Virus record (IMG/VR): IMGVR_UViG_3300032214_000715
Location: 175,164 to 239,163 of that record
Strand: one strand, 5' to 3'
Length of the DNA stretch: 64,000 bases
Part shown: positions 27,322 to 45,982 of the stretch, piece by piece
Layout: every line of letters begins with the position of its first letter
How positions within the stretch are numbered: position 1 is the first letter of the stretch
Made by a program: the position numbers and the translations under genes
The notes under the pieces: model-generated
Seen by the model: only the letters and a program-made list of their open reading frames with translations
Told to the model about the DNA's origin: nothing
The model's database searches: none

Positions 27322-30300
27322 TCACAGTATTACTGCTTCTATTTTTTTAACTTCATCCAACTCGCTTGACTCAATGGCTATAGCAAAAACATTACTGTAA
27401 TCAATTACGTCAATGATTTCATTTACAGCATTAATTGAGATAGCGTAGCCATTATTGTGTGCTATCAATCTATCTCCTTTATTGACTTTGCCAATTACCT
27501 TTACTGGGACTCTACCCTTTAGTGCTACGTATATTCCATTTATTAAAGCAGAATTCATCATATAAGCTGGATTTTTACTTATTACTCCAATAGCTTTATC
27601 TCTAAATGATGAAGCTGTTATTTCTGCTGCTCCGCCAATAGACACTACCGTTCCGTAATCATAGTTTTCATCGGACAAGTATTTCTCAGCTAAGTCGGCA
27701 TACTGAGCGCTAGTAGCAACCCCGTTAAATTTTACAGCATTAAGCTCGCCGTTTGAATTTCTACAAGCAATACTATTTGCTGTTCCCACGCCGGCCGTAT
27801 CTACTCTAGCTTCTCTCCAAGAATCAGTTGATATATCAACTACTTTAAGTTTTGTGACCGTGACGATTTGATTTGAATCTATCGTTAATCCATTTCCGAT
27901 CTTGATTCCACCTAGAACACTATCCGTGGCAACTGGTAATTCATAAACAGATGAAGCAGCAACTGATATAACTCCGTTGGCATCTATAGTTACATTGCTT
28001 CCCTGCTTGACACCACCAAGTGTAGATGAAGTAGCTATCGGTAATTCATAAACAGATGAAGCAGCAACTGATATGACTCCATTGGCATCTATGGTCACAT
28101 TACTTCCCTGCTTGACACCGCCCAGCACTGAGCTAGTAGCTATCGGTAATGAATAAGGAGCAGCAACTGATATAACTCCGTTGGCATCTATAGTTACATT
28201 GCTTCCTTGCTTGACTCCACCTAATATGGATGAAGTAGCTATCGGTAATTCGTAAACAGATGGAGCAGCAACTGATATAACTCCGTTGGCATCTATAGTT
28301 ACATTACTTCCCTGTTTTACACCACCCAGTACTGAGCTAGTAGCTATCGGTAATTCGTAAACAGATGGAGCAGCAACTGATATAACTCCGTTGGCATCTA
28401 TAGTTACATTACTTCCCTGAATAACTCCACCCAGTGTAGATGAAGTAGCTATCGGTAATGGGGGTGCTGACACCGCAGCAGAAACCCATTCTGTTCCATT
28501 CCATTTTAAATAATCATTAGTTTGTTTATTTCCGGTAGATACATTTAACAACTCATCTAGTGAATCGCGTTGACGTATTAAATAATTTGTCTGACTAATT
28601 ATTGATCTAGCGTCAGTTTCCATCTTTGCTATTAATACTCTAGTAAAAGAACTAGGCAATTCTATATCGGACTTAAAAACGGTTACAGATGTTGTATCGT
28701 CATCATTTTTTAATACATAGATATAATTAATTGAATTAGCAGAAAGACTAATGCTCTGTGTTGGAATAGTAGTGTAGTACCCACCTATAAATAGTGGGCA
28801 CGTTGTAACATACGCAATTAATCCAGTAGCACTTTCAGTAGACACATAAATCTGGTTTCTAGGTTTACTACCTGTTAGCCACTCTAGTTCTGTTAGTTCT
28901 GTTTTAACCCCAGTTACATCTTTGGACGACAGAAATACCATAGAGTCATAATTACCGCTTGAAGCGGCTCTATAGTATCCTAGAGCAGTACTATATCCAA
29001 AGGATCCGCCAGGATAACCATTGGTTGATGTGTATCCTCCTGAGCCAGTAGATGTTTCAGCAAAGCTAGACACGTGAGAAGTACTAACGATGTCCGAGCT
29101 AATTTCTATAGATGCCCAATAAAATGCTCTTCCGCCAACTACATTTATACCAAAATTTACTAATAACTTCCCGCTATTAGTTAATAACGTCGGGCCACTA
29201 AATTCAATTTGATTGATATTGTCACCGCGATTTGTTTTACCGTAATCAATTTCTGTTTGAAAGACGGAATTTGTGTTTAGCGTCCAAGTACCATTGGTAC
29301 ACTTGGCCAAATAGCACATGCCGACTGAATCTTTAACTATGGCATAGTATTTGGGAGTGATAGTATTTGCGTCCCAGCAAATATGAATCACAGTTATTCC
29401 AGATTTTCCATTAAGTGTGGTTGGTATTGATGGTACGATAATGTTTGTGTTTGTATAAGTTCTAGTGGCGCCCGTGCTGTTAATAGTGTAAATTGGTTCA
29501 TTTCCTACTATCCAACAGTAGCTTGGTGTAGTTCCAACCACCGTAGTTGAGAAATTGGTAATAGACCCATTATTTTTTATTACAGCAGGAGCATTAGCTA
29601 AAGGATCTAAATTTATATCAGAATTACTTAATATCAACGTATCATTAGTTTGTCCCTGAGCCTTTGAGGCAAACTCAGTCTTGCTGAATGTAGTTTGTAT
29701 AATTTTTGTTCCGTAAGTTACTGATCCTGCTGAAAAATACATATTATTGTCTATTACATAGACCGAATCGCTGTAAACATACTTGGACCAGGGAGACGCA
29801 TCAATTATTCTTTCGGTAAAACTGGTATATCTAGCGGAATTGTTTATGCTTAATGTTTTGTAAGTGAACCCACTAGTGTGTGGCAAAACATATACATCTC
29901 CTATATCAGTTGAAGTCCACGTACTTCTAAATAATTGAAATATTGTTCCGCTATACTCATCTGTTACAAGAGAAGTGGAGTAGCCGGCGCCACCCAATCC
30001 CTGACTCATACCTCCGTTATCCGTATCCCACGTGGAGTCGCTTAACTGATTATATCTAAAAGTTCCAGATTTAATTGGAATTAAATTAACAGTAGTTCCG
30101 CTACCACTTTCTATCCAGGATTTTGGTATAGACCATGATATGTCAAGTGCTACACCCTGACCAACTGATGCTCCTGTGCTAGTGGTATATACATACCAGA
30201 TATGAAATCTTTGATGAAAAGTTTCCGAAAATGAATTCCAGGTAAACCCATAAGAATTATTGGGCGCATATCCTAGTAAAGGCAAAACGTTTGGAGCAAT

Positions 30301-42415: not shown

Positions 42416-43873
42416 TCATTTATATTCTAGTTTCTCAAGCGTATAGGGATAATTTGCTTCCCTATAGAACTCTTTTCGTTTAGTTAGATGACGTTTTGCA
42501 AATTTACAACTACTGGTTATGTCCCAGATTTGAACGAAGTCTTTGTCCTCTGCTTTTCTAATGCCTCGCCCAATGCTTTGTATAACTCTGACAAAGCTTT
42601 TTCCGGGTTCCACAAGAACCAGATTAAAAATACGAGGAATATTAATACCCACAGCGGCCACACCATAAGTCGCCACAATAATCTTGTCATCACTAGTCGC
42701 AACTTCATCATATTCTTCTTTGCGTTCTTTTAGTTTTGTTTTGCCACGAATAAACACACTATTTGGTAATCTAGCAATCAACTCTTCTCCGGCAGCAACA
42801 CGATCAACCAATATTAATGTGTTGCCACTTTCTACAATTTTTTCAACCAAACTGCTGATAGTGTCTAGTCGTTTTCCATCAGTAAGTAAGTGAGTCAACT
42901 CACTTTGATAATCACGAAACTCAACGTGATCCTGCATCTGAACGATATTCACATGACACTGTGACAACACACCGGCATTTTGTAATTCGTTGGCACTTAG
43001 TTTACCAATTACTGAGCCTATACAAGTGAATAGCGCTTGACTGGCAAACTTATCTTTTGGTATGGTGCCAGTTAGCCCCCAACGAATCGGAATTTTAGAC
43101 ATCGTTCCGCTTAGCAATTGCTTTAGTGCGTCTGCTTTTACCGAATGGCATTCATCAATCATCAAGCATACTACACCCTCAATAAACTCATCAATAGTTA
43201 TGTCTGCTTCGCCATTCTTGGTGTTCTTTAGTAGATTGTTTAGACTTTGCCAAGTACAAATTGTATGCGTGTGACCTACTTCTTTGCGATCACCAAAATA
43301 GACTCCAACGTCTAACCCAAGATTTCTGTAGTCTGCTTCAGTCTGTGTTACAAGCGATTTGTTTGGCACAATCACTAAAGTTCTTCCGGAATTTTCGCAA
43401 CAATACGATAGTGCGGCCGTAATCAGTGTCTTTCCCGCGCCCGTAGCGACCTCTTGTATTGATTGTGGATTACTTAAGAAATTGTTTACAATGTCAACCT
43501 GATAGTCGCGCAACACTACAGGCTGCCCAACAAGTGGATGCCCCACAGGCCAAGTCTTGTTGGAAAAAGTGGCTTCTGTTATTTGATTAAAACTAAAATT
43601 GGTCTGATAGTCTCTTGTATCGTCTAGTTCAATATCATAATTGTGTTCTTCTAGATAAGGAAGAATTTCTTCTAACAGATTTATATAAGTGCTACCGCCT
43701 AATTGAAAGTAAGATGTTTTACCATTCCAACGTCCAAGTCTGACACTAGGTAGATATTTGGCACCTGGAATTTCATATTCAAATTTCTTTACCAAAGCAC
43801 GACGAGTATCTAAATCCAAGCCCTCTAGCTTGACGTTGACCTCATCGCGTATGATTATTTTACATTTCTTCAT
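42416..43873 (-). CDS. uvsW: UvsW-like SF2 DNA helicase
   Basis: LRDYQ; ATGAGKT; IDECH; GLTGT; VGINIP; QSIGRGIR; start MKKCK at 43873. Confidence 0.92.
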   Translation of the reverse strand: MKKCKIIIRDEVNVKLEGLDLDTRRALVKKFEYEIPGAKYLPSVRLGRWNGKTSYFQLGGSTYINLLEEILPYLEEHNYDIELDDTRDYQTNFSFNQITEATFSNKTWPVGHPLVGQPVVLRDYQVDIVNNFLSNPQSIQEVATGAGKTLITAALSYCCENSGRTLVIVPNKSLVTQTEADYRNLGLDVGVYFGDRKEVGHTHTICTWQSLNNLLKNTKNGEADITIDEFIEGVVCLMIDECHSVKADALKQLLSGTMSKIPIRWGLTGTIPKDKFASQALFTCIGSVIGKLSANELQNAGVLSQCHVNIVQMQDHVEFRDYQSELTHLLTDGKRLDTISSLVEKIVESGNTLILVDRVAAGEELIARLPNSVFIRGKTKLKERKEEYDEVATSDDKIIVATYGVAAVGINIPRIFNLVLVEPGKSFVRVIQSIGRGIRKAEDKDFVQIWDITSSCKFAKRHLTKRKEFYREANYPYTLEKLEYK

Positions 43874-43879
43874 TAAAGT

Positions 43880-43909
43880 AGTATACACAATTCACGTGTG
43901 AATTGTCAA
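43880..43909 (-). promoter_or_regulatory. Sigma70 promoter of the uvsW operon with palindromic spacer
   Basis: TTGACA-18 nt-TATACT; acaattcac-gt-gtgaattgt at 43887-43906. Confidence 0.7.
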
Positions 43910-43925
43910 ACACATAGTAGCCAAT

Positions 43926-44144
43926 TTATTTGTGTTTTGCTTTTTGTACTACGATCCAATCGTTACGAGAAGTTATTTCTGTGTCGTTATCCAGCACTAT
44001 AGTAGTGCCTTCAACCGCGGTTACTGTTCTTTGTTCGCCGGTTTCTTTGTGTTTGATAACATCACCACGCATAATGCCGCGACCATATGGGTACTTGTAT
44101 TCACTTCCGCCATAACTTTCGGTCAGCAATTCGACTATCTTCAT
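43926..44144 (-). CDS. Small SH3-like hypothetical protein
   Basis: 72 aa; MKIVELLTE start; late promoter at 44150-44157. Confidence 0.55.
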   Translation of the reverse strand: MKIVELLTESYGGSEYKYPYGRGIMRGDVIKHKETGEQRTVTAVEGTTIVLDNDTEITSRNDWIVVQKAKHK

Positions 44145-44190
44145 AGTATTATTTATACAGAAAGCAAAAAGCCCGCGCTAGATAAATAAA

Positions 44191-44251
44191 AGTGTAGTTC
44201 GCGAGCCTCGGAAACTCCAACTACTCTAACGCTTATAAGGAGCAATCAGCA
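44191..44251 (+). ncRNA. Candidate structured 5' leader RNA of the HNH gene
   Basis: GTAGTT(44194-99)/AACTAC(44219-24) stem with inner GAG/CTC; GCTT/GAGC hairpin over the SD; preceded by GATAAATA at 44181. Confidence 0.45.
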
Positions 44252-44902
44252 ATGTTATTTAGTAAAAATAAACGAGATATTTCATATATAAAAATTTGGG
44301 TTGAACATCATGGTCCAATTCCATTAGATAAAAATGGAAGAAGAATGGAAATTCATCACATAGACGGTGATAAAACCAACAATAACATAAACAATCTTCA
44401 ACTACTGACAATTGAAGAACATTTTGATATTCATTACAAACAACAGGACTATGGATCTTGCTATCTAATTGCTATTAGAATGAAAAAATCACCAGAAGAA
44501 ATTTCTGATCTTGCTCGTCAAGCACAATTAAAAAGAGTGACAGACGGAACTCATCATTTTTTAGGCCCTGCTATGAATGCTAAAAGAGTGACAGCCGGAA
44601 CTCATCACTGGCTTGATGGAACAAAGTCCAGAGAGACTCAAAACAATCTTGTGAAAAGCGGAGTACACAGATTTGTCAATTCTGATTGGCAGAAAAATAA
44701 TCAACTCAGTCTAGTTGAGTCAGGAAAGCATAACTTTCTCGGCGGACATTTACAAAAATCATTGGTAAAATCAGGAAAGCATCATTTCGTGACATCCAAT
44801 CCAGGAAAGATTCAGTGGGTGTGCGAGAAATGCGGGAAAGAGGGAAAGGGAAAAACCAATTACGCTCGTTGGCATGGAGAAAATTGCGTAGTAAAAAAAT
44901 AG
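44252..44902 (+). mobile_element. Free-standing HNH homing endonuclease
   Basis: HHGPIP..EIHHIDGDKTNNNINNLQLL..EEH..IH; five GxH(H/N/R)(F/W) repeats; C-terminal CEKC..H..NC; opposite strand to neighbours. Confidence 0.88.
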
Positions 44903-44920
44903 GGAGCAATTGCTCCCTAT
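44893..44920 (-). terminator. Terminator between the ATPase and HNH genes
   Basis: atagggagcaattgctccctat palindrome followed by a T-run on the minus strand. Confidence 0.8.
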
Positions 44921-44935
44921 AACGTGTGATGAATT

Positions 44936-45982
44936 TCAGTTCTTAACGCAGCATGTCTCCAGCGCAAGCATCTTCCAGTCAGTGGGATCAATTCTATACA
45001 GATCAGCAATCTTGAGAGCCATACGCAAACTCAACTCGCGAAGAATTTCTTTATTAGCCCACATGAACTCCAGAATTTCTTCGGATTGATTGTCCAGAAA
45101 TTCGTAATCAGCAAACAGACCGCCAACCACATCTTGACTGGCATCGGTGTGTACCTGACGAATTCTCAACATTTTGTCACGCGAGGTATTGATCGTGAGA
45201 TCCAGATAGTGACACCGAGATTGCAGAGCGGACAAGTGAGCAGCAATCTTCTTAGAGCGACGGTCGCTAAGATCCAGATTCGTCACAAAGATGCACGCCC
45301 CGTTGAACTCAAAATCGGTGGGAATGCCTTCCTTACGAAGAAAAGACGAATCACTATTCCACCAAATACGACGGCGCTTACCCGAATCAAGTGCGGCCTT
45401 CAGAATGTTCAGCGCATCTGGGTCATCAAAAACGTCTACGTCATCAAAGACCAAAACATTCTTACTGTCGCTATACTTGTACAGCAGTGCGTACAAACCG
45501 ATGGCAGTAATAGCGCCCTTGACAATCTCAAAGCGAACACGCTTGCCTGCCAGCTTGTCAAACAGACTTGCCTTTTCCAGTTGAGTCTCAATACCAAACG
45601 ACTTGCCAACGCCAGGAGGGCCAGTAACGATCATAGCACGACAGTCGCCGTTGATCGTAGCCTTGGTCATGGTGTCAAGAATACGAAACCGGCGACGGAT
45701 GCGATCCATGGCCTGCTCGTCAGTTTCATTGGATTCGGTCATAACTTCTGGCGAGAATGCTACAATTTGAGTGGGACGCGAGTTACCGTTGACGAATTCA
45801 ACATCAGCAGAATCGGTGATTTCAATATAAACCTGCTTGGAATCTCCAGGCAGTTGACCGTCATTCTTAACTTGAACACGACCAGGAGTAGAATCCAGAG
45901 GACGAGCCAGCGTGAACATCATGTTCTCAACAGCAAAGTTCATCTTGCGATACACGCCGCGCTTGACAAGAATTTGAGCCAT
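44936..45982 (-). CDS. AAA+/P-loop ATPase (early gene)
   Basis: IVTGPPGVGKS; VLVFDDVD; IFVTN; ALQSRC arginine finger. Confidence 0.85.
   Translation of the reverse strand: MAQILVKRGVYRKMNFAVENMMFTLARPLDSTPGRVQVKNDGQLPGDSKQVYIEITDSADVEFVNGNSRPTQIVAFSPEVMTESNETDEQAMDRIRRRFRILDTMTKATINGDCRAMIVTGPPGVGKSFGIETQLEKASLFDKLAGKRVRFEIVKGAITAIGLYALLYKYSDSKNVLVFDDVDVFDDPDALNILKAALDSGKRRRIWWNSDSSFLRKEGIPTDFEFNGACIFVTNLDLSDRRSKKIAAHLSALQSRCHYLDLTINTSRDKMLRIRQVHTDASQDVVGGLFADYEFLDNQSEEILEFMWANKEILRELSLRMALKIADLYRIDPTDWKMLALETCCVKN

What the first reader, a model, noticed from the sequence alone, without database searches (positions are those of the whole stretch)
44181..44902. HNH endonuclease with a compact structured leader RNA and repeated His modules
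Seen: a late promoter GATAAATA, then AG-T-GTAGTT...AACTAC-T-CT (8 of 9 bp) enclosing CGC-GAG-loop-CTC, then TCTAAC and a GCTT/GAGC hairpin over the SD. The protein has an N-terminal HNH, five GxH(H/N/R)(F/W) repeats spaced about 18-24 aa apart, and a C-terminal Cys/His Zn knuckle. Established: T4 homing-endonuclease genes are controlled by RBS-sequestering hairpins, and some HNH nucleases work with associated ncRNAs (HEARO, IscB/omegaRNA). My unverified recollection is that similar GTAGTT..AACTACTCTAAC leaders precede other free-standing endonucleases in related phages. Inference: a mobile RNA-plus-nuclease unit in which the RNA is an autoregulatory operator or a cofactor.
Basis: partly seen in the sequence, partly recalled or inferred. 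Interest (0 to 1): 0.66.

Follow-up and report, generated by a model that had tools for sequence, protein, structure and literature searches.

The report
Antisense RNA module guarding phage homing endonucleases
The "leader" in front of this phage HNH homing-endonuclease gene is one copy of a widespread, previously uncatalogued structured-RNA module that travels with many unrelated homing-endonuclease genes, and its conserved fold lies on the opposite strand, pointing to a small antisense RNA that covers the nuclease's ribosome-binding site.

Summary
The promoter-like GATAAATA, both hairpins, the I-TevIII-like HNH ORF, five GxHx(F/W) repeats and the C-terminal CCHC knuckle are all at the stated places.

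Folded alone, the leader is no better than shuffled sequence (z = 0). Comparison settles it. The same ~85-nt module occurs four times in this phage genome, each before a homing endonuclease (one HNH, three GIY-YIG-like). It also occurs in more than 170 places on about 150 IMG/VR contigs and once in cultured Variovorax phage V45v66. It matches no Rfam family.

Covariation is strong, but it favours the opposite strand:
- Antisense reading: 98.2% of cells paired. Sense reading: 89.6%.
- Nearly all sense "mismatches" are A·C, which are G·U wobbles on the antisense.
- An 8-bp helix forms only on the antisense.

A second promoter-type motif sits inverted in codons 2-4 at a fixed distance, whatever the reading frame or nuclease family.

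Best reading: convergent promoters about 70 bp apart give the nuclease mRNA and a ~66-nt antisense RNA with a 5' hairpin (anti-SD in its loop) and a terminator hairpin plus U-tract. This would work like IS10 RNA-OUT. No transcript has been observed.

An empty-site relative shows that promoter, module, ORF and terminator form one ~740-bp insertion. The cofactor or protein-operator idea is not supported.

The parts
44181..44188 (+). Sense promoter-type motif GATAAATA (T4-late-like) for the endonuclease mRNA. Read on the minus strand, with the following A-run, it is the U-rich tail of the antisense terminator.
   Evidence: Sequence. ATAAATA is 14-fold enriched upstream of ORFs in this genome. It is kept in 79 of 103 leaders (TAAATA in 89 of 103) that were ascertained only by their 3' end.
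44194..44224 (.). Hairpin 1: two-tier stem with a conserved asymmetric internal loop. On the minus strand it is the terminator hairpin of the predicted antisense RNA. On the plus strand it is a 5'-terminal hairpin of the mRNA.
   Evidence: All 11 pairs show compensatory changes. Pairing is 94.4% read as sense and 97.9% read as antisense. The C44206/A44214 mismatch on the sense strand is a G·U pair on the antisense.
44226..44249 (-). Antisense 5' hairpin (helix A): 44226-44233 pairs with 44241-44249, with A44244 bulged. The 7-nt loop 44234-44240 reads CCUUAUA, complementary to the mRNA's SD region.
   Evidence: An 8-bp helix that forms only on the minus strand. The central wobble pair is present in 103 of 103 sequences read as antisense and 1 of 103 read as sense. 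Helix pairing is 98.7%, and 5 of 8 pairs covary.
44183..44250 (-). Predicted antisense small RNA, about 67 nt. Its 5' end lies near 44250 (G of GCUGAU), and its 3' end lies in the U-tract 44192-44183.
   Evidence: Inferred from the promoter-type motif, the T4 spacing rule and the hairpin plus U-tract. MFE is -14.6 kcal/mol for the window copy. Median predicted length across the family is 66 nt. No transcript data.
44255..44262 (-). Antisense promoter-type motif CTAAATAA, lying in codons 2-4 of the HNH ORF.
   Evidence: TATTTA(T) is kept at a fixed distance from CAGC in 51 of 59 leaders ascertained by their 5' end, between variable flanking columns. This holds in three reading frames and in GIY-YIG, HNH_3 and HNH ORFs. 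The CTAAATA variant also serves as the sense motif in other copies and in phage V45v66.
44237..44242 (+). Shine-Dalgarno AAGGAG of the HNH gene.
   Evidence: Sequence. It lies in the loop and 3' arm of the weak sense hairpin 2 and is fully covered by the predicted antisense RNA.
44252..44902 (+). Free-standing I-TevIII-like HNH homing endonuclease, 216 aa. HNH_3 domain nt 44291-44422, five GxHx(F/W) repeats nt 44546-44788, CCHC knuckle nt 44822-44887.
44902..44917 (.). Perfect 16-nt palindrome at the 3' end of the cassette. On the minus strand it is followed by a T-run, so it acts as terminator for the AAA-ATPase gene and insulates the HNH gene.
   Evidence: Terminator-like site called on the minus strand at 44920-44899. 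Sequence.
44170..44925 (.). Approximate extent of the mobile insertion (promoter, RNA module, HNH ORF, terminator) relative to an empty-site relative. Boundaries are good to about ±15 bp.
   Evidence: L232 (AAA protein 81%, UvsW 87% identical) has a 77-bp AAA/orf72 spacer with a different hairpin and no HNH gene.

Best explanation
The region 44181-44262 is a compact, portable regulatory module carried by free-standing homing-endonuclease genes.

Two promoter-type motifs of the phage's ATAAATA class face each other about 70 bp apart. The plus-strand one (44181-88) would start the endonuclease mRNA at about 44194. The minus-strand one lies in codons 2-4 (44262-44255) and would start a small RNA of about 66 nt at about 44250.

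That RNA consists of:
- a 5'-terminal 8-bp hairpin whose loop is complementary to the SD;
- a two-tier hairpin followed by a U-rich tail, which is the complement of the sense promoter plus its A-run and would serve as an intrinsic terminator.

The RNA is perfectly complementary to the whole 5' UTR of the mRNA (44194-44250). I propose that it pairs with the mRNA, probably starting loop to loop, blocks ribosome binding and possibly triggers duplex cleavage. This would keep nuclease output low or thresholded, as RNA-OUT does for IS10 transposase and sar RNA does for P22 ant.

Shown:
- family membership, with recurrence before endonuclease genes only (apart from a minority of copies with no complete ORF, at least one a decayed remnant);
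- covariation;
- the selected fold being on the minus strand;
- conservation of both motifs at fixed spacing;
- the module being part of the inserted cassette.

Inferred:
- that the motifs are active promoters;
- that the hairpin terminates transcription;
- that a discrete small RNA exists;
- that it represses translation.
For: (1) Recurrence. Covariance model R1 finds four copies in this genome, at genome positions 29582, 56406, 61659 and 219344 (the last is window 44181), each directly before an endonuclease ORF. It finds one in cultured Variovorax phage V45v66 and none in T4.

(2) Covariation on the 3'-anchored set, where the hairpins were not used for ascertainment. Sense model: 89.6% of cells paired, score 0.644 against 0.195 for shuffles and at most 0.12 for slid controls.

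(3) Strand.
- On the same loci the antisense model gives 98.2% of cells paired, score 0.692 against 0.213, with 16 of 19 pairs covarying.
- Sense mismatches are almost all A·C or C·A. At one pair the counts are GC 69, AC 24, AT 10 and GU 0. Read as antisense this is the classic G-C / G·U / A-U path.
- The helix joining the conserved UCUAAY and AUCAG blocks exists only on the antisense.
- Antisense MFE is lower in 99 of 103 sequences (mean -16.8 against -12.2 kcal/mol) and in 53 of 57 of the other set.
- The sense-fitted alignments should bias against this result.

(4) Antisense promoter motif. TATTTA(T) is conserved between variable neighbouring columns. It sits at the same distance from CAGC in ORFs that begin M-T/N-I-Y, M-I-F-I-D, M-Y-L-x or M-L-F-S, and in all 11 HNH_3/HNH ORFs of the 5'-anchored set. 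With T4's spacing rule (my own knowledge), both predicted start sites fall exactly at the first base of a helix.

(5) The A-run after the sense motif, which becomes the antisense U-tract, is specific to these leaders among 101 NATAAATA sites in the genome. It persists in variants that lack the sense motif.

(6) The cassette is mobile as a whole.
Against: - No transcript evidence.
- T4 gp55 was not found in this partial record.
- The window's own antisense motif is the CTAAATA variant, not ATAAATA. Only one of the four copies in this genome has the perfect heptamer.
- For GIY-YIG ORFs, the I-Y codons that spell TATTTAT are also the protein's GIY motif, so part of that conservation is at the protein level.
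- The simple terminator scan did not call hairpin 1 on the minus strand, because it is two-tiered with a long apical part. In many copies the U-tract is interrupted, with only 5-6 U in 10 nt.
- Two basal pairs of hairpin 1 show G·U on the sense strand, in 11 and 28 sequences. A sense-strand role is therefore not excluded.
- The CM-fitted alignments lean towards the structure each model was given.
Confidence: 0.55

Rival explanations
1. It acts only as a sense-strand cis element. The mRNA's 5'-terminal hairpin stabilises the message and the small SD hairpin throttles translation. There is no functional antisense RNA.
For: The sense model is also strongly supported: 89.6-92% of cells paired, with compensatory changes in all core pairs. 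The predicted sense start falls at the base of hairpin 1. G·U pairs occur on the sense strand at the two basal pairs. RNA hairpins at T4 endonuclease genes are established (PMC2988022).
Against: Three to five positions tolerate A·C on the sense strand but are paired in 99-100% of sequences read as antisense. The UCUAAY and AUCAGC blocks pair only on the antisense. Mean MFE of the hairpin-2 segment on the sense strand is only -2.4 kcal/mol. This reading does not explain the frame-independent TATTTA(T) in codons 2-4.
Confidence: 0.15
2. It is a PeSL-like composite promoter/terminator cassette. The hairpin plus U-tract merely terminates minus-strand transcription running through the inverted endonuclease gene. 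The repeated module mainly serves as a recombination handle that shuffles endonuclease ORFs.
For: The module is repeated four times per genome and shared by unrelated nuclease ORFs. HNH_3 proteins even carry an added 'MTIY...' N-terminus from the module, which implies recombination inside it. The upstream neighbour is divergent in 33 of 49 loci. PeSLs are described composite terminator/promoter repeats that mediate shuffling in T4-like phages (PMC4122927).
Against: PeSLs carry early promoters and flank diverse ORFans, whereas this module has a late-type motif and precedes endonucleases only. A terminator does not need the conserved 5' hairpin with an anti-SD loop, nor a promoter motif at fixed spacing. 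In 16 of 49 loci the neighbours are co-directional, so no minus-strand transcription would arrive. The cassette already has a terminator at its other end.
Confidence: 0.15
3. It is T4-style occlusion in read-through transcripts. In long transcripts from upstream, AUAAAUA (the promoter sequence) pairs with UAUUUAU (codons 2-4), closing a three-way junction that buries the SD and AUG. Transcripts started at the late promoter lack the 5' arm and are translated.
For: There is an exact 7-nt inverted repeat at fixed spacing. The principle is established for I-TevI, segB, mobE, e and soc (PMC2988022).
Against: The helix would be 7 A-U pairs only, and RNAalifold does not predict it. By eye on alignment A2, the bases flanking the two motifs do not covary, so the repeat is no longer than the promoter consensus itself. 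This reading does not explain why the fold is better on the minus strand. Most of these genes are antisense to their neighbours, so read-through sense transcripts should be rare.
Confidence: 0.07
4. One reading: the RNA is a cofactor or guide for the nuclease, or the nuclease's own RNA operator (HEARO or IscB/omega-RNA-like).
For: There is tight physical linkage of the RNA and the nuclease gene within one mobile unit.
Against: The same RNA module precedes GIY-YIG-like, HNH_3 and HNH proteins with different DNA-binding parts. There is no HEARO or other Rfam match. The protein is a 216-aa I-TevIII-type enzyme with no RuvC or IscB architecture. The fold is selected on the opposite strand.
Confidence: 0.03

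Closest known systems
IS10/Tn10 RNA-IN / RNA-OUT (also P22 sar RNA against ant, and hok/sok-type antisense control); from my own knowledge
   Same: A small, stably folded antisense RNA is made from a promoter just inside the 5' end of a mobile-element nuclease or transposase gene. It points outward and is complementary to the mRNA's 5' end and ribosome-binding site. The two promoters face each other over a few tens of bp.
   Different: Here the gene is a phage homing endonuclease and both promoters are of the phage late type. The antisense terminator tail is the complement of the sense promoter. The module is shared by several unrelated nuclease families. Expression and repression are not yet shown.
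RBS-sequestering hairpins with late promoters at T4-family homing endonuclease genes (I-TevI, I-TevII, I-TevIII, segB, Aeh1 mobE); PMC2988022
   Same: A late-type promoter sits immediately upstream of a homing-endonuclease ORF. RNA structure around the SD plausibly serves to limit nuclease translation. The protein here is an I-TevIII relative.
   Different: In T4 the late promoter lies inside a stable inhibitory hairpin, so late transcripts escape it. Here the promoter precedes both hairpins, the sense SD hairpin is weak, the selected fold is on the other strand, and T4 itself has no match to the model.
CfrI antisense RNA of cyanophage S-PM2 (Millard et al. 2010, cited in PMC2984593)
   Same: It is an antisense RNA in a T4-like phage that overlaps a homing-endonuclease gene.
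   Different: CfrI is about 225 nt, links the endonuclease gene to psbA, and is not described there as a conserved covarying module. The present element is about 66 nt, covers only the 5' UTR, and recurs in hundreds of copies.
PeSLs, composite promoter-early/stem-loop cassettes of T4-like phages (PMC2839356, PMC4122927)
   Same: It is a short repeated promoter-plus-hairpin cassette, present several times per genome, at which unrelated ORFs appear to have been exchanged.
   Different: PeSLs have early promoters and flank miscellaneous hyperplastic-region genes. This module has late-type motifs on both strands and precedes only endonucleases.
I-TevIII (phage RB3 nrdB intron HNH endonuclease)
   Same: The protein has an HNH_3 catalytic domain, about 33% identity over 95% of its length, and a C-terminal Cys/His knuckle.
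   Different: It is free-standing in an intergenic terminator region, not intron-encoded. It carries a 5-residue N-terminal extension encoded by the RNA module.

Membership tests
I-TevIII-like HNH homing endonucleases (Pfam HNH_3 / PHROG 12324) | HNH_3 catalytic domain near the N-terminus | tested here: met
   PF13392, E 7e-13, aa 14-57.
I-TevIII-like HNH homing endonucleases (Pfam HNH_3 / PHROG 12324) | Full-length similarity to I-TevIII, including the C-terminal zinc knuckle | tested here: met
   tblastn gives about 33% identity over residues 10-215 to I-TevIII of RB3 and relatives. phrog_12324 E 1.4e-39. CxxC-x13-H-x3-C at aa 191-212.
I-TevIII-like HNH homing endonucleases (Pfam HNH_3 / PHROG 12324) | Residence in a group I intron | tested here: not met
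   It is free-standing: a ~740-bp insertion in the AAA/orf72 intergenic spacer, as shown against empty-site L232. No Rfam intron match in 44100-44350.
I-TevIII-like HNH homing endonucleases (Pfam HNH_3 / PHROG 12324) | Site-specific DNA cleavage and homing | not testable with these tools
   Needs cleavage assays or mixed infections.
T4-type RBS-sequestering hairpin control of endonuclease genes | Late promoter immediately upstream of the ORF | tested here: met
   GATAAATA lies 64 nt before the ATG. The motif is 14-fold enriched upstream of ORFs. Promoter activity itself was not tested.
T4-type RBS-sequestering hairpin control of endonuclease genes | A stable hairpin that buries the SD and forms only in longer transcripts because the late promoter lies inside it | tested here: not met
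   The promoter motif precedes both hairpins. Mean MFE of the hairpin-2 (SD) segment on the sense strand is -2.4 kcal/mol. No closing helix was predicted.
Cis-antisense small RNA regulators (IS10 RNA-OUT, P22 sar, hok/sok type) | Conserved secondary structure on the strand opposite to the target mRNA | tested here: met
   98.2% of cells paired and 16 of 19 pairs covarying on the antisense, against 89.6% on the sense. The G·U versus A·C asymmetry points the same way.
Cis-antisense small RNA regulators (IS10 RNA-OUT, P22 sar, hok/sok type) | Own promoter on the opposite strand, near or inside the 5' end of the target gene | tested here: inconclusive
   A (A/C)TAAATA motif lies in codons 2-4 at fixed spacing in 51 of 59 leaders, independent of frame and protein family. 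Promoter activity is not shown, and the window copy is the CTAAATA variant.
Cis-antisense small RNA regulators (IS10 RNA-OUT, P22 sar, hok/sok type) | Defined 3' end (terminator) | tested here: inconclusive
   A hairpin plus U-rich tail is present, with 5-7 U in 10 nt. The simple terminator scan did not call it.
Cis-antisense small RNA regulators (IS10 RNA-OUT, P22 sar, hok/sok type) | Detected transcript and repression of the target | not testable with these tools
HEARO / IscB omega-RNA type nuclease-associated RNAs | Match to the HEARO/omega-RNA model next to an IscB-type (RuvC+HNH) protein | tested here: not met
   No Rfam match at E up to 10 on either strand. The protein is a 216-aa HNH_3 enzyme.
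PeSL cassettes | Early (sigma-70-type) promoter plus stem-loop, flanking diverse hyperplastic-region ORFs | tested here: not met
   Late-type motif. Of the 133 unique complete ORFs after the module, 87 are GIY..YIG-like by pattern and about 21 HNH_3/HNH-like; Pfam adds NUMOD3 (39); most of the rest look like homing-endonuclease relatives by eye. The repeated-cassette aspect is shared.

The most novel reading that the evidence does not exclude
The module is a self-contained, portable RNA-IN/RNA-OUT-like unit that endonuclease genes of unrelated families capture by recombination. Its fast-evolving upper stem and loop would act as an address code. Each antisense RNA would then silence only its own, or a near-identical incoming, endonuclease mRNA. 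This would give copy-number control and a form of RNA-based exclusion between competing homing endonucleases in co-infecting phages.
Probability: 0.2. Interest if true: 0.85.

Novelty: new variant of a known kind. Interest (0 to 1): 0.74.

Why it matters
Homing endonucleases are the main selfish DNA of large phages. How their output is kept harmless has been worked out only for a few T4 genes, through RBS hairpins and autorepression.

Here a single ~85-nt module, absent from Rfam 15, recurs hundreds of times in environmental phage genomes. It accompanies several unrelated nuclease families and has unusually clean covariation. Its strand signature points to a small antisense RNA.

If confirmed, this would be:
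- a widespread RNA-based control layer for phage mobile DNA;
- a new RNA family for annotation, and a marker for free-standing endonuclease cassettes and their boundaries;
- a compact natural design in which each promoter doubles as part of the other strand's transcript signals.

It is directly testable in a cultured system, Variovorax phage V45v66.

Tried and rejected
- Megablast of the locus against 50,697 cultured phage records found nothing.
- blastn of typical leaders found nothing at E 1e-3. At E 10 the only real hit was V45v66; the others were chance 20-30-nt matches in tail-fibre genes.
- Rfam at E up to 10 gave only three chance-level matches outside the element.
- Single-sequence folding showed no signal.
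- T4 gp55 against the own genome found nothing, but the record is 68% complete and a single-sequence search is weak evidence.
- PDB sequence search for the HNH protein gave no hit.
- The simple terminator scan did not flag hairpin 1 on the minus strand.
- I looked by eye on alignment A2 for extension or covariation of an AUAAAUA/UAUUUAU closing helix and saw none.
- I considered a ribozyme or riboswitch. There is no Rfam match and the hairpins have no conserved multi-helix core, so I dropped it.
- I considered that the codon 2-4 motif drives a divergent upstream gene. I rejected this as a general explanation, because a third of loci have co-directional neighbours and flanking genes keep their own promoter motifs.
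- Literature searches found no description of this module, but the library is not exhaustive.
- The large protein searches were not used, because family scans settled the protein.
Full report
**1. What is at the coordinates**

The window is the last 64 kb of a 239-kb IMG/VR phage record estimated 68% complete. Its UvsW-like helicase is 50-53% identical to those of jumbo phages Phosso, Atu_ph07 and PA5oct.

At 44252-44902 (+) lies a 216-aa ORF, the only plus-strand gene among minus-strand neighbours. These are a 72-aa ORF at 43926-44144, UvsW at 42416-43888, and an AAA-type protein at 44936-45982.

The ORF is an I-TevIII-type HNH homing endonuclease:
- Pfam HNH_3, E 7e-13.
- PHROG 12324 'intron-like DNA endonuclease', E 1.4e-39.
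- About 33% identity to I-TevIII over 95% of its length.
- Five GxHx(F/W) motifs spaced 17-21 aa apart, and a CxxC-x13-H-x3-C knuckle.

Upstream are GATAAATA (44181-88), the 8-of-9-bp stem with inner GAG/CTC, TCTAAC, and a 4-bp hairpin at the SD.

**2. Is it more than chance?**

Not from this sequence alone. The 72-nt leader folds at -11.6 kcal/mol against a shuffle mean of -11.59, so z = 0.00. The 131-nt context gives z = -0.10.

The signal is comparative. A pattern search of the whole genome found the same architecture three more times outside the window. The shared layout is:
- the promoter motif;
- 3-4 bases;
- a two-tier hairpin;
- UCUAAY;
- a small SD hairpin;
- AUCAGC;
- the ATG.

Each of the three extra copies lies directly before an endonuclease ORF with a GIY-YIG-type N-terminus. 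Two of these ORFs share the HNH protein's C-terminal knuckle. The copies already show compensatory changes, for example GTAGTT/AACTAC against GTAGGT/ACCTAC against GTCAGT/ACTGAC. The inner helices are all different. A covariance model scores the four copies at 69-88 bits.

Other endonuclease-like genes of the genome lack the module.

**3. A large family**

About 50 of them carry the full module.

About 85 of 91 unique hits have the full module, with very diverse hairpin sequences.

Model R1 finds 59 and 117 matches on the two sets, often several per contig. Contigs range from a few kb to 360 kb.

Rfam 15 has no matching family on either strand. Among 50,697 cultured phage records only Variovorax phage V45v66 has it, as one copy before a GIY-YIG ORF. 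T4 has none.

**4. What follows the module**

There are 133 unique complete ORFs after the module:
- 87 have a GIY...YIG-type N-terminus by pattern.
- About 12 are I-TevIII-like HNH_3 and about 12 are classical HNH.
- Pfam finds NUMOD3 in 39, HNH_3 in 13, GIY-YIG in 10 and HNH in 8.
- Most of the rest look like homing-endonuclease relatives by eye.
- Some copies have no complete ORF after them; at least one (L044) is a decayed remnant with no nuclease ORF.

The module is therefore specific to homing endonucleases as a class, not to one protein family. This argues against a cofactor or a nuclease-specific operator.

**5. Covariation and strand**

On the 3'-anchored set, whose hairpins were not used for ascertainment, the sense structure has 89.6% of cells paired. 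All 11 core pairs of hairpin 1 and all 5 pairs of hairpin 2 show compensatory changes. The covariation score is 0.644, against 0.195 for shuffles and at most 0.12 for slid controls. The 5'-anchored set gives 92.0% and 0.453.

The residual mismatches are not random. They are almost all A·C or C·A, which become G·U wobbles on the complementary strand:
- At one pair the counts are GC 69, AC 24, AT 10 and GU 0.
- At another they are CA 36, TA 34 and CG 19.
- The invariant blocks UCUAAY and AUCAG cannot pair on the sense strand (1 of 103 at the central position). On the antisense they pair in 103 of 103.
- This pairing extends hairpin 2 into an 8-bp helix.

The antisense strand is more stable in 99 of 103 sequences (mean MFE -16.8 against -12.2 kcal/mol) and in 53 of 57 of the other set.

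I built an antisense model, R2, from the 5'-anchored set and ran it on the 3'-anchored loci:
- 98.2% of 1,971 cells are paired.
- 16 of 19 pairs covary.
- The covariation score is 0.692 against 0.213 for shuffles.
- Bit scores are higher than the sense model's for almost every element.

The sense-fitted alignments would bias against this result, so I regard the strand assignment as solid. A weaker sense fold necessarily exists as its mirror image. Two basal pairs even prefer the sense strand (G·U in 11 and 28 sequences), so a sense role is not excluded.

**6. The second promoter motif**

Codons 2-4 read TATTTA(T), the complement of the promoter motif.

In the 5'-anchored set it is present in 51 of 59 leaders. 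The exceptions are mostly leaders with no complete ORF after them. It sits between poorly conserved columns: 0.24 bits before it and 0.2-0.55 bits after it.

It stays at the same distance from CAGC in ORFs that read M-T/N-I-Y, M-I-F-I-D, M-Y-L-x or M-L-F-S. It is also present in all 11 HNH_3/HNH ORFs of that set. These proteins carry an extra 'MTIY..' or 'MLFSK' N-terminus that canonical I-TevIII lacks. This is conservation at the nucleotide level.

ATAAATA itself behaves as a promoter motif in this genome. It lies in sense orientation 8-70 nt upstream of 53 ORFs, against 3.7 expected and 9 for the antisense-oriented control. T4 gp55 was not detected in the partial record.

By the T4 late-promoter spacing rule (my own knowledge), the sense start would be G44194, the first base of hairpin 1. 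The antisense start would be the complement of C44250, one base before helix A.

The antisense hairpin 1 is followed by the complement of the sense motif plus its A-run, which gives 5-7 U in 10 nt. That A-run is peculiar to these leaders among the 101 NATAAATA sites in the genome. It persists in variants that lack the sense motif.

The predicted RNA has a median length of 66 nt, range 60-78. In the window it runs from 44250 down to about 44183, with MFE -14.6 kcal/mol.

**7. Mechanism proposed**

Convergent promoters would give the endonuclease mRNA and a stable small antisense RNA. That RNA has a 5'-terminal hairpin with an anti-SD loop and a terminator hairpin. It is complementary to the whole 5' UTR (44194-44250). 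Pairing would block the SD.

This is the logic of IS10 RNA-OUT and P22 sar (my own knowledge). It fits the known need for tight control of T4 endonucleases (PMC2988022). The only antisense RNA over a phage endonuclease gene that my searches found is CfrI of S-PM2 (PMC2984593).

The variable upper stem and loop differ among the copies within one genome. This would limit cross-talk, but that is inference.

**8. Mobility**

A relative, L232, has an AAA protein 81% identical and UvsW 87% identical. Its AAA and orf72 genes are 77 bp apart, with a different hairpin and no HNH gene.

Alignment places the window's insertion at about 44170/44181 to 44917/44925. It therefore comprises the promoter, the module, the ORF and the palindromic terminator at 44902-44917.

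**9. Limits**

- No expression data could be obtained.
- The window's antisense motif is the CTAAATA variant. That variant is used as the sense motif in three other leaders and in V45v66.
- The terminator is not called by the simple scanner.
- Both IMG/VR scans were capped, so counts are lower bounds and ascertained by pattern.
- CM alignments lean towards their own structures.
- Literature searches in the available library found no prior description, which is not proof of novelty.

Noticed in passing
L231:4120-6729 (IMGVR_UViG_3300009160_000212): In this relative the UvsW-like helicase is an 869-aa ORF with an in-frame insertion of about 380 aa in the Walker A motif (GAGK^T). The insertion starts with Cys, ends in HN followed by Thr, and has two LAGLIDADG-type blocks. 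It is an intein allele that the window's UvsW (42416-43888) lacks.
   Followed up: partly
window 44150-44188: Promoter motifs lie back to back. TATAAATA on the minus strand (44157-44150) sits only 5 nt before the ATG of the 72-aa ORF. GATAAATA on the plus strand lies 24 nt away. The genome copy at 29575-29589 has the two motifs directly abutting.
   Followed up: partly
IMG/VR loci, e.g. L164, L168, L182, L183, L221, L223-L225; L188, L191, L197, L208: A short GTCAA(C/T) word recurs 7-12 nt upstream of the sense promoter motif in many copies. In a few copies it replaces the motif and is followed directly by the A-run. Its meaning is unknown; it could be a second promoter element or an insertion-site remnant.
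   Followed up: no
L044:131-300: This is a decayed copy of the module. The leader is intact up to CAGC, followed by a 9-codon ORF and then a 558-aa ORF that looks like a large terminase subunit. It appears to be a remnant left after loss of the endonuclease.
   Followed up: no
own genome 33499-33575, minus strand (outside the window; L126): GATAAATA is followed by a perfect 11-bp hairpin that starts with the same TGTAG word. It scores 24.5 bits with the model and lies before a non-endonuclease gene with a long leader. Several other motif-proximal 5' hairpins exist, for example at window positions 743 and 2710 on the minus strand. A 5'-terminal hairpin may be a more general feature of some late-type leaders here.
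   Followed up: no
own genome 56475-57344 and 61728-62336 (L122, L124): Two GIY-YIG-type endonucleases share the HNH protein's C-terminal CCHC knuckle (twice in one of them). This indicates that DNA-binding modules are shuffled between nuclease families as well as the RNA module.
   Followed up: partly
own genome about 75.2-78.4 kb (outside the window): Sequences following two promoter motifs look like tRNA genes, suggesting a tRNA cluster. I did not scan for them.
   Followed up: no
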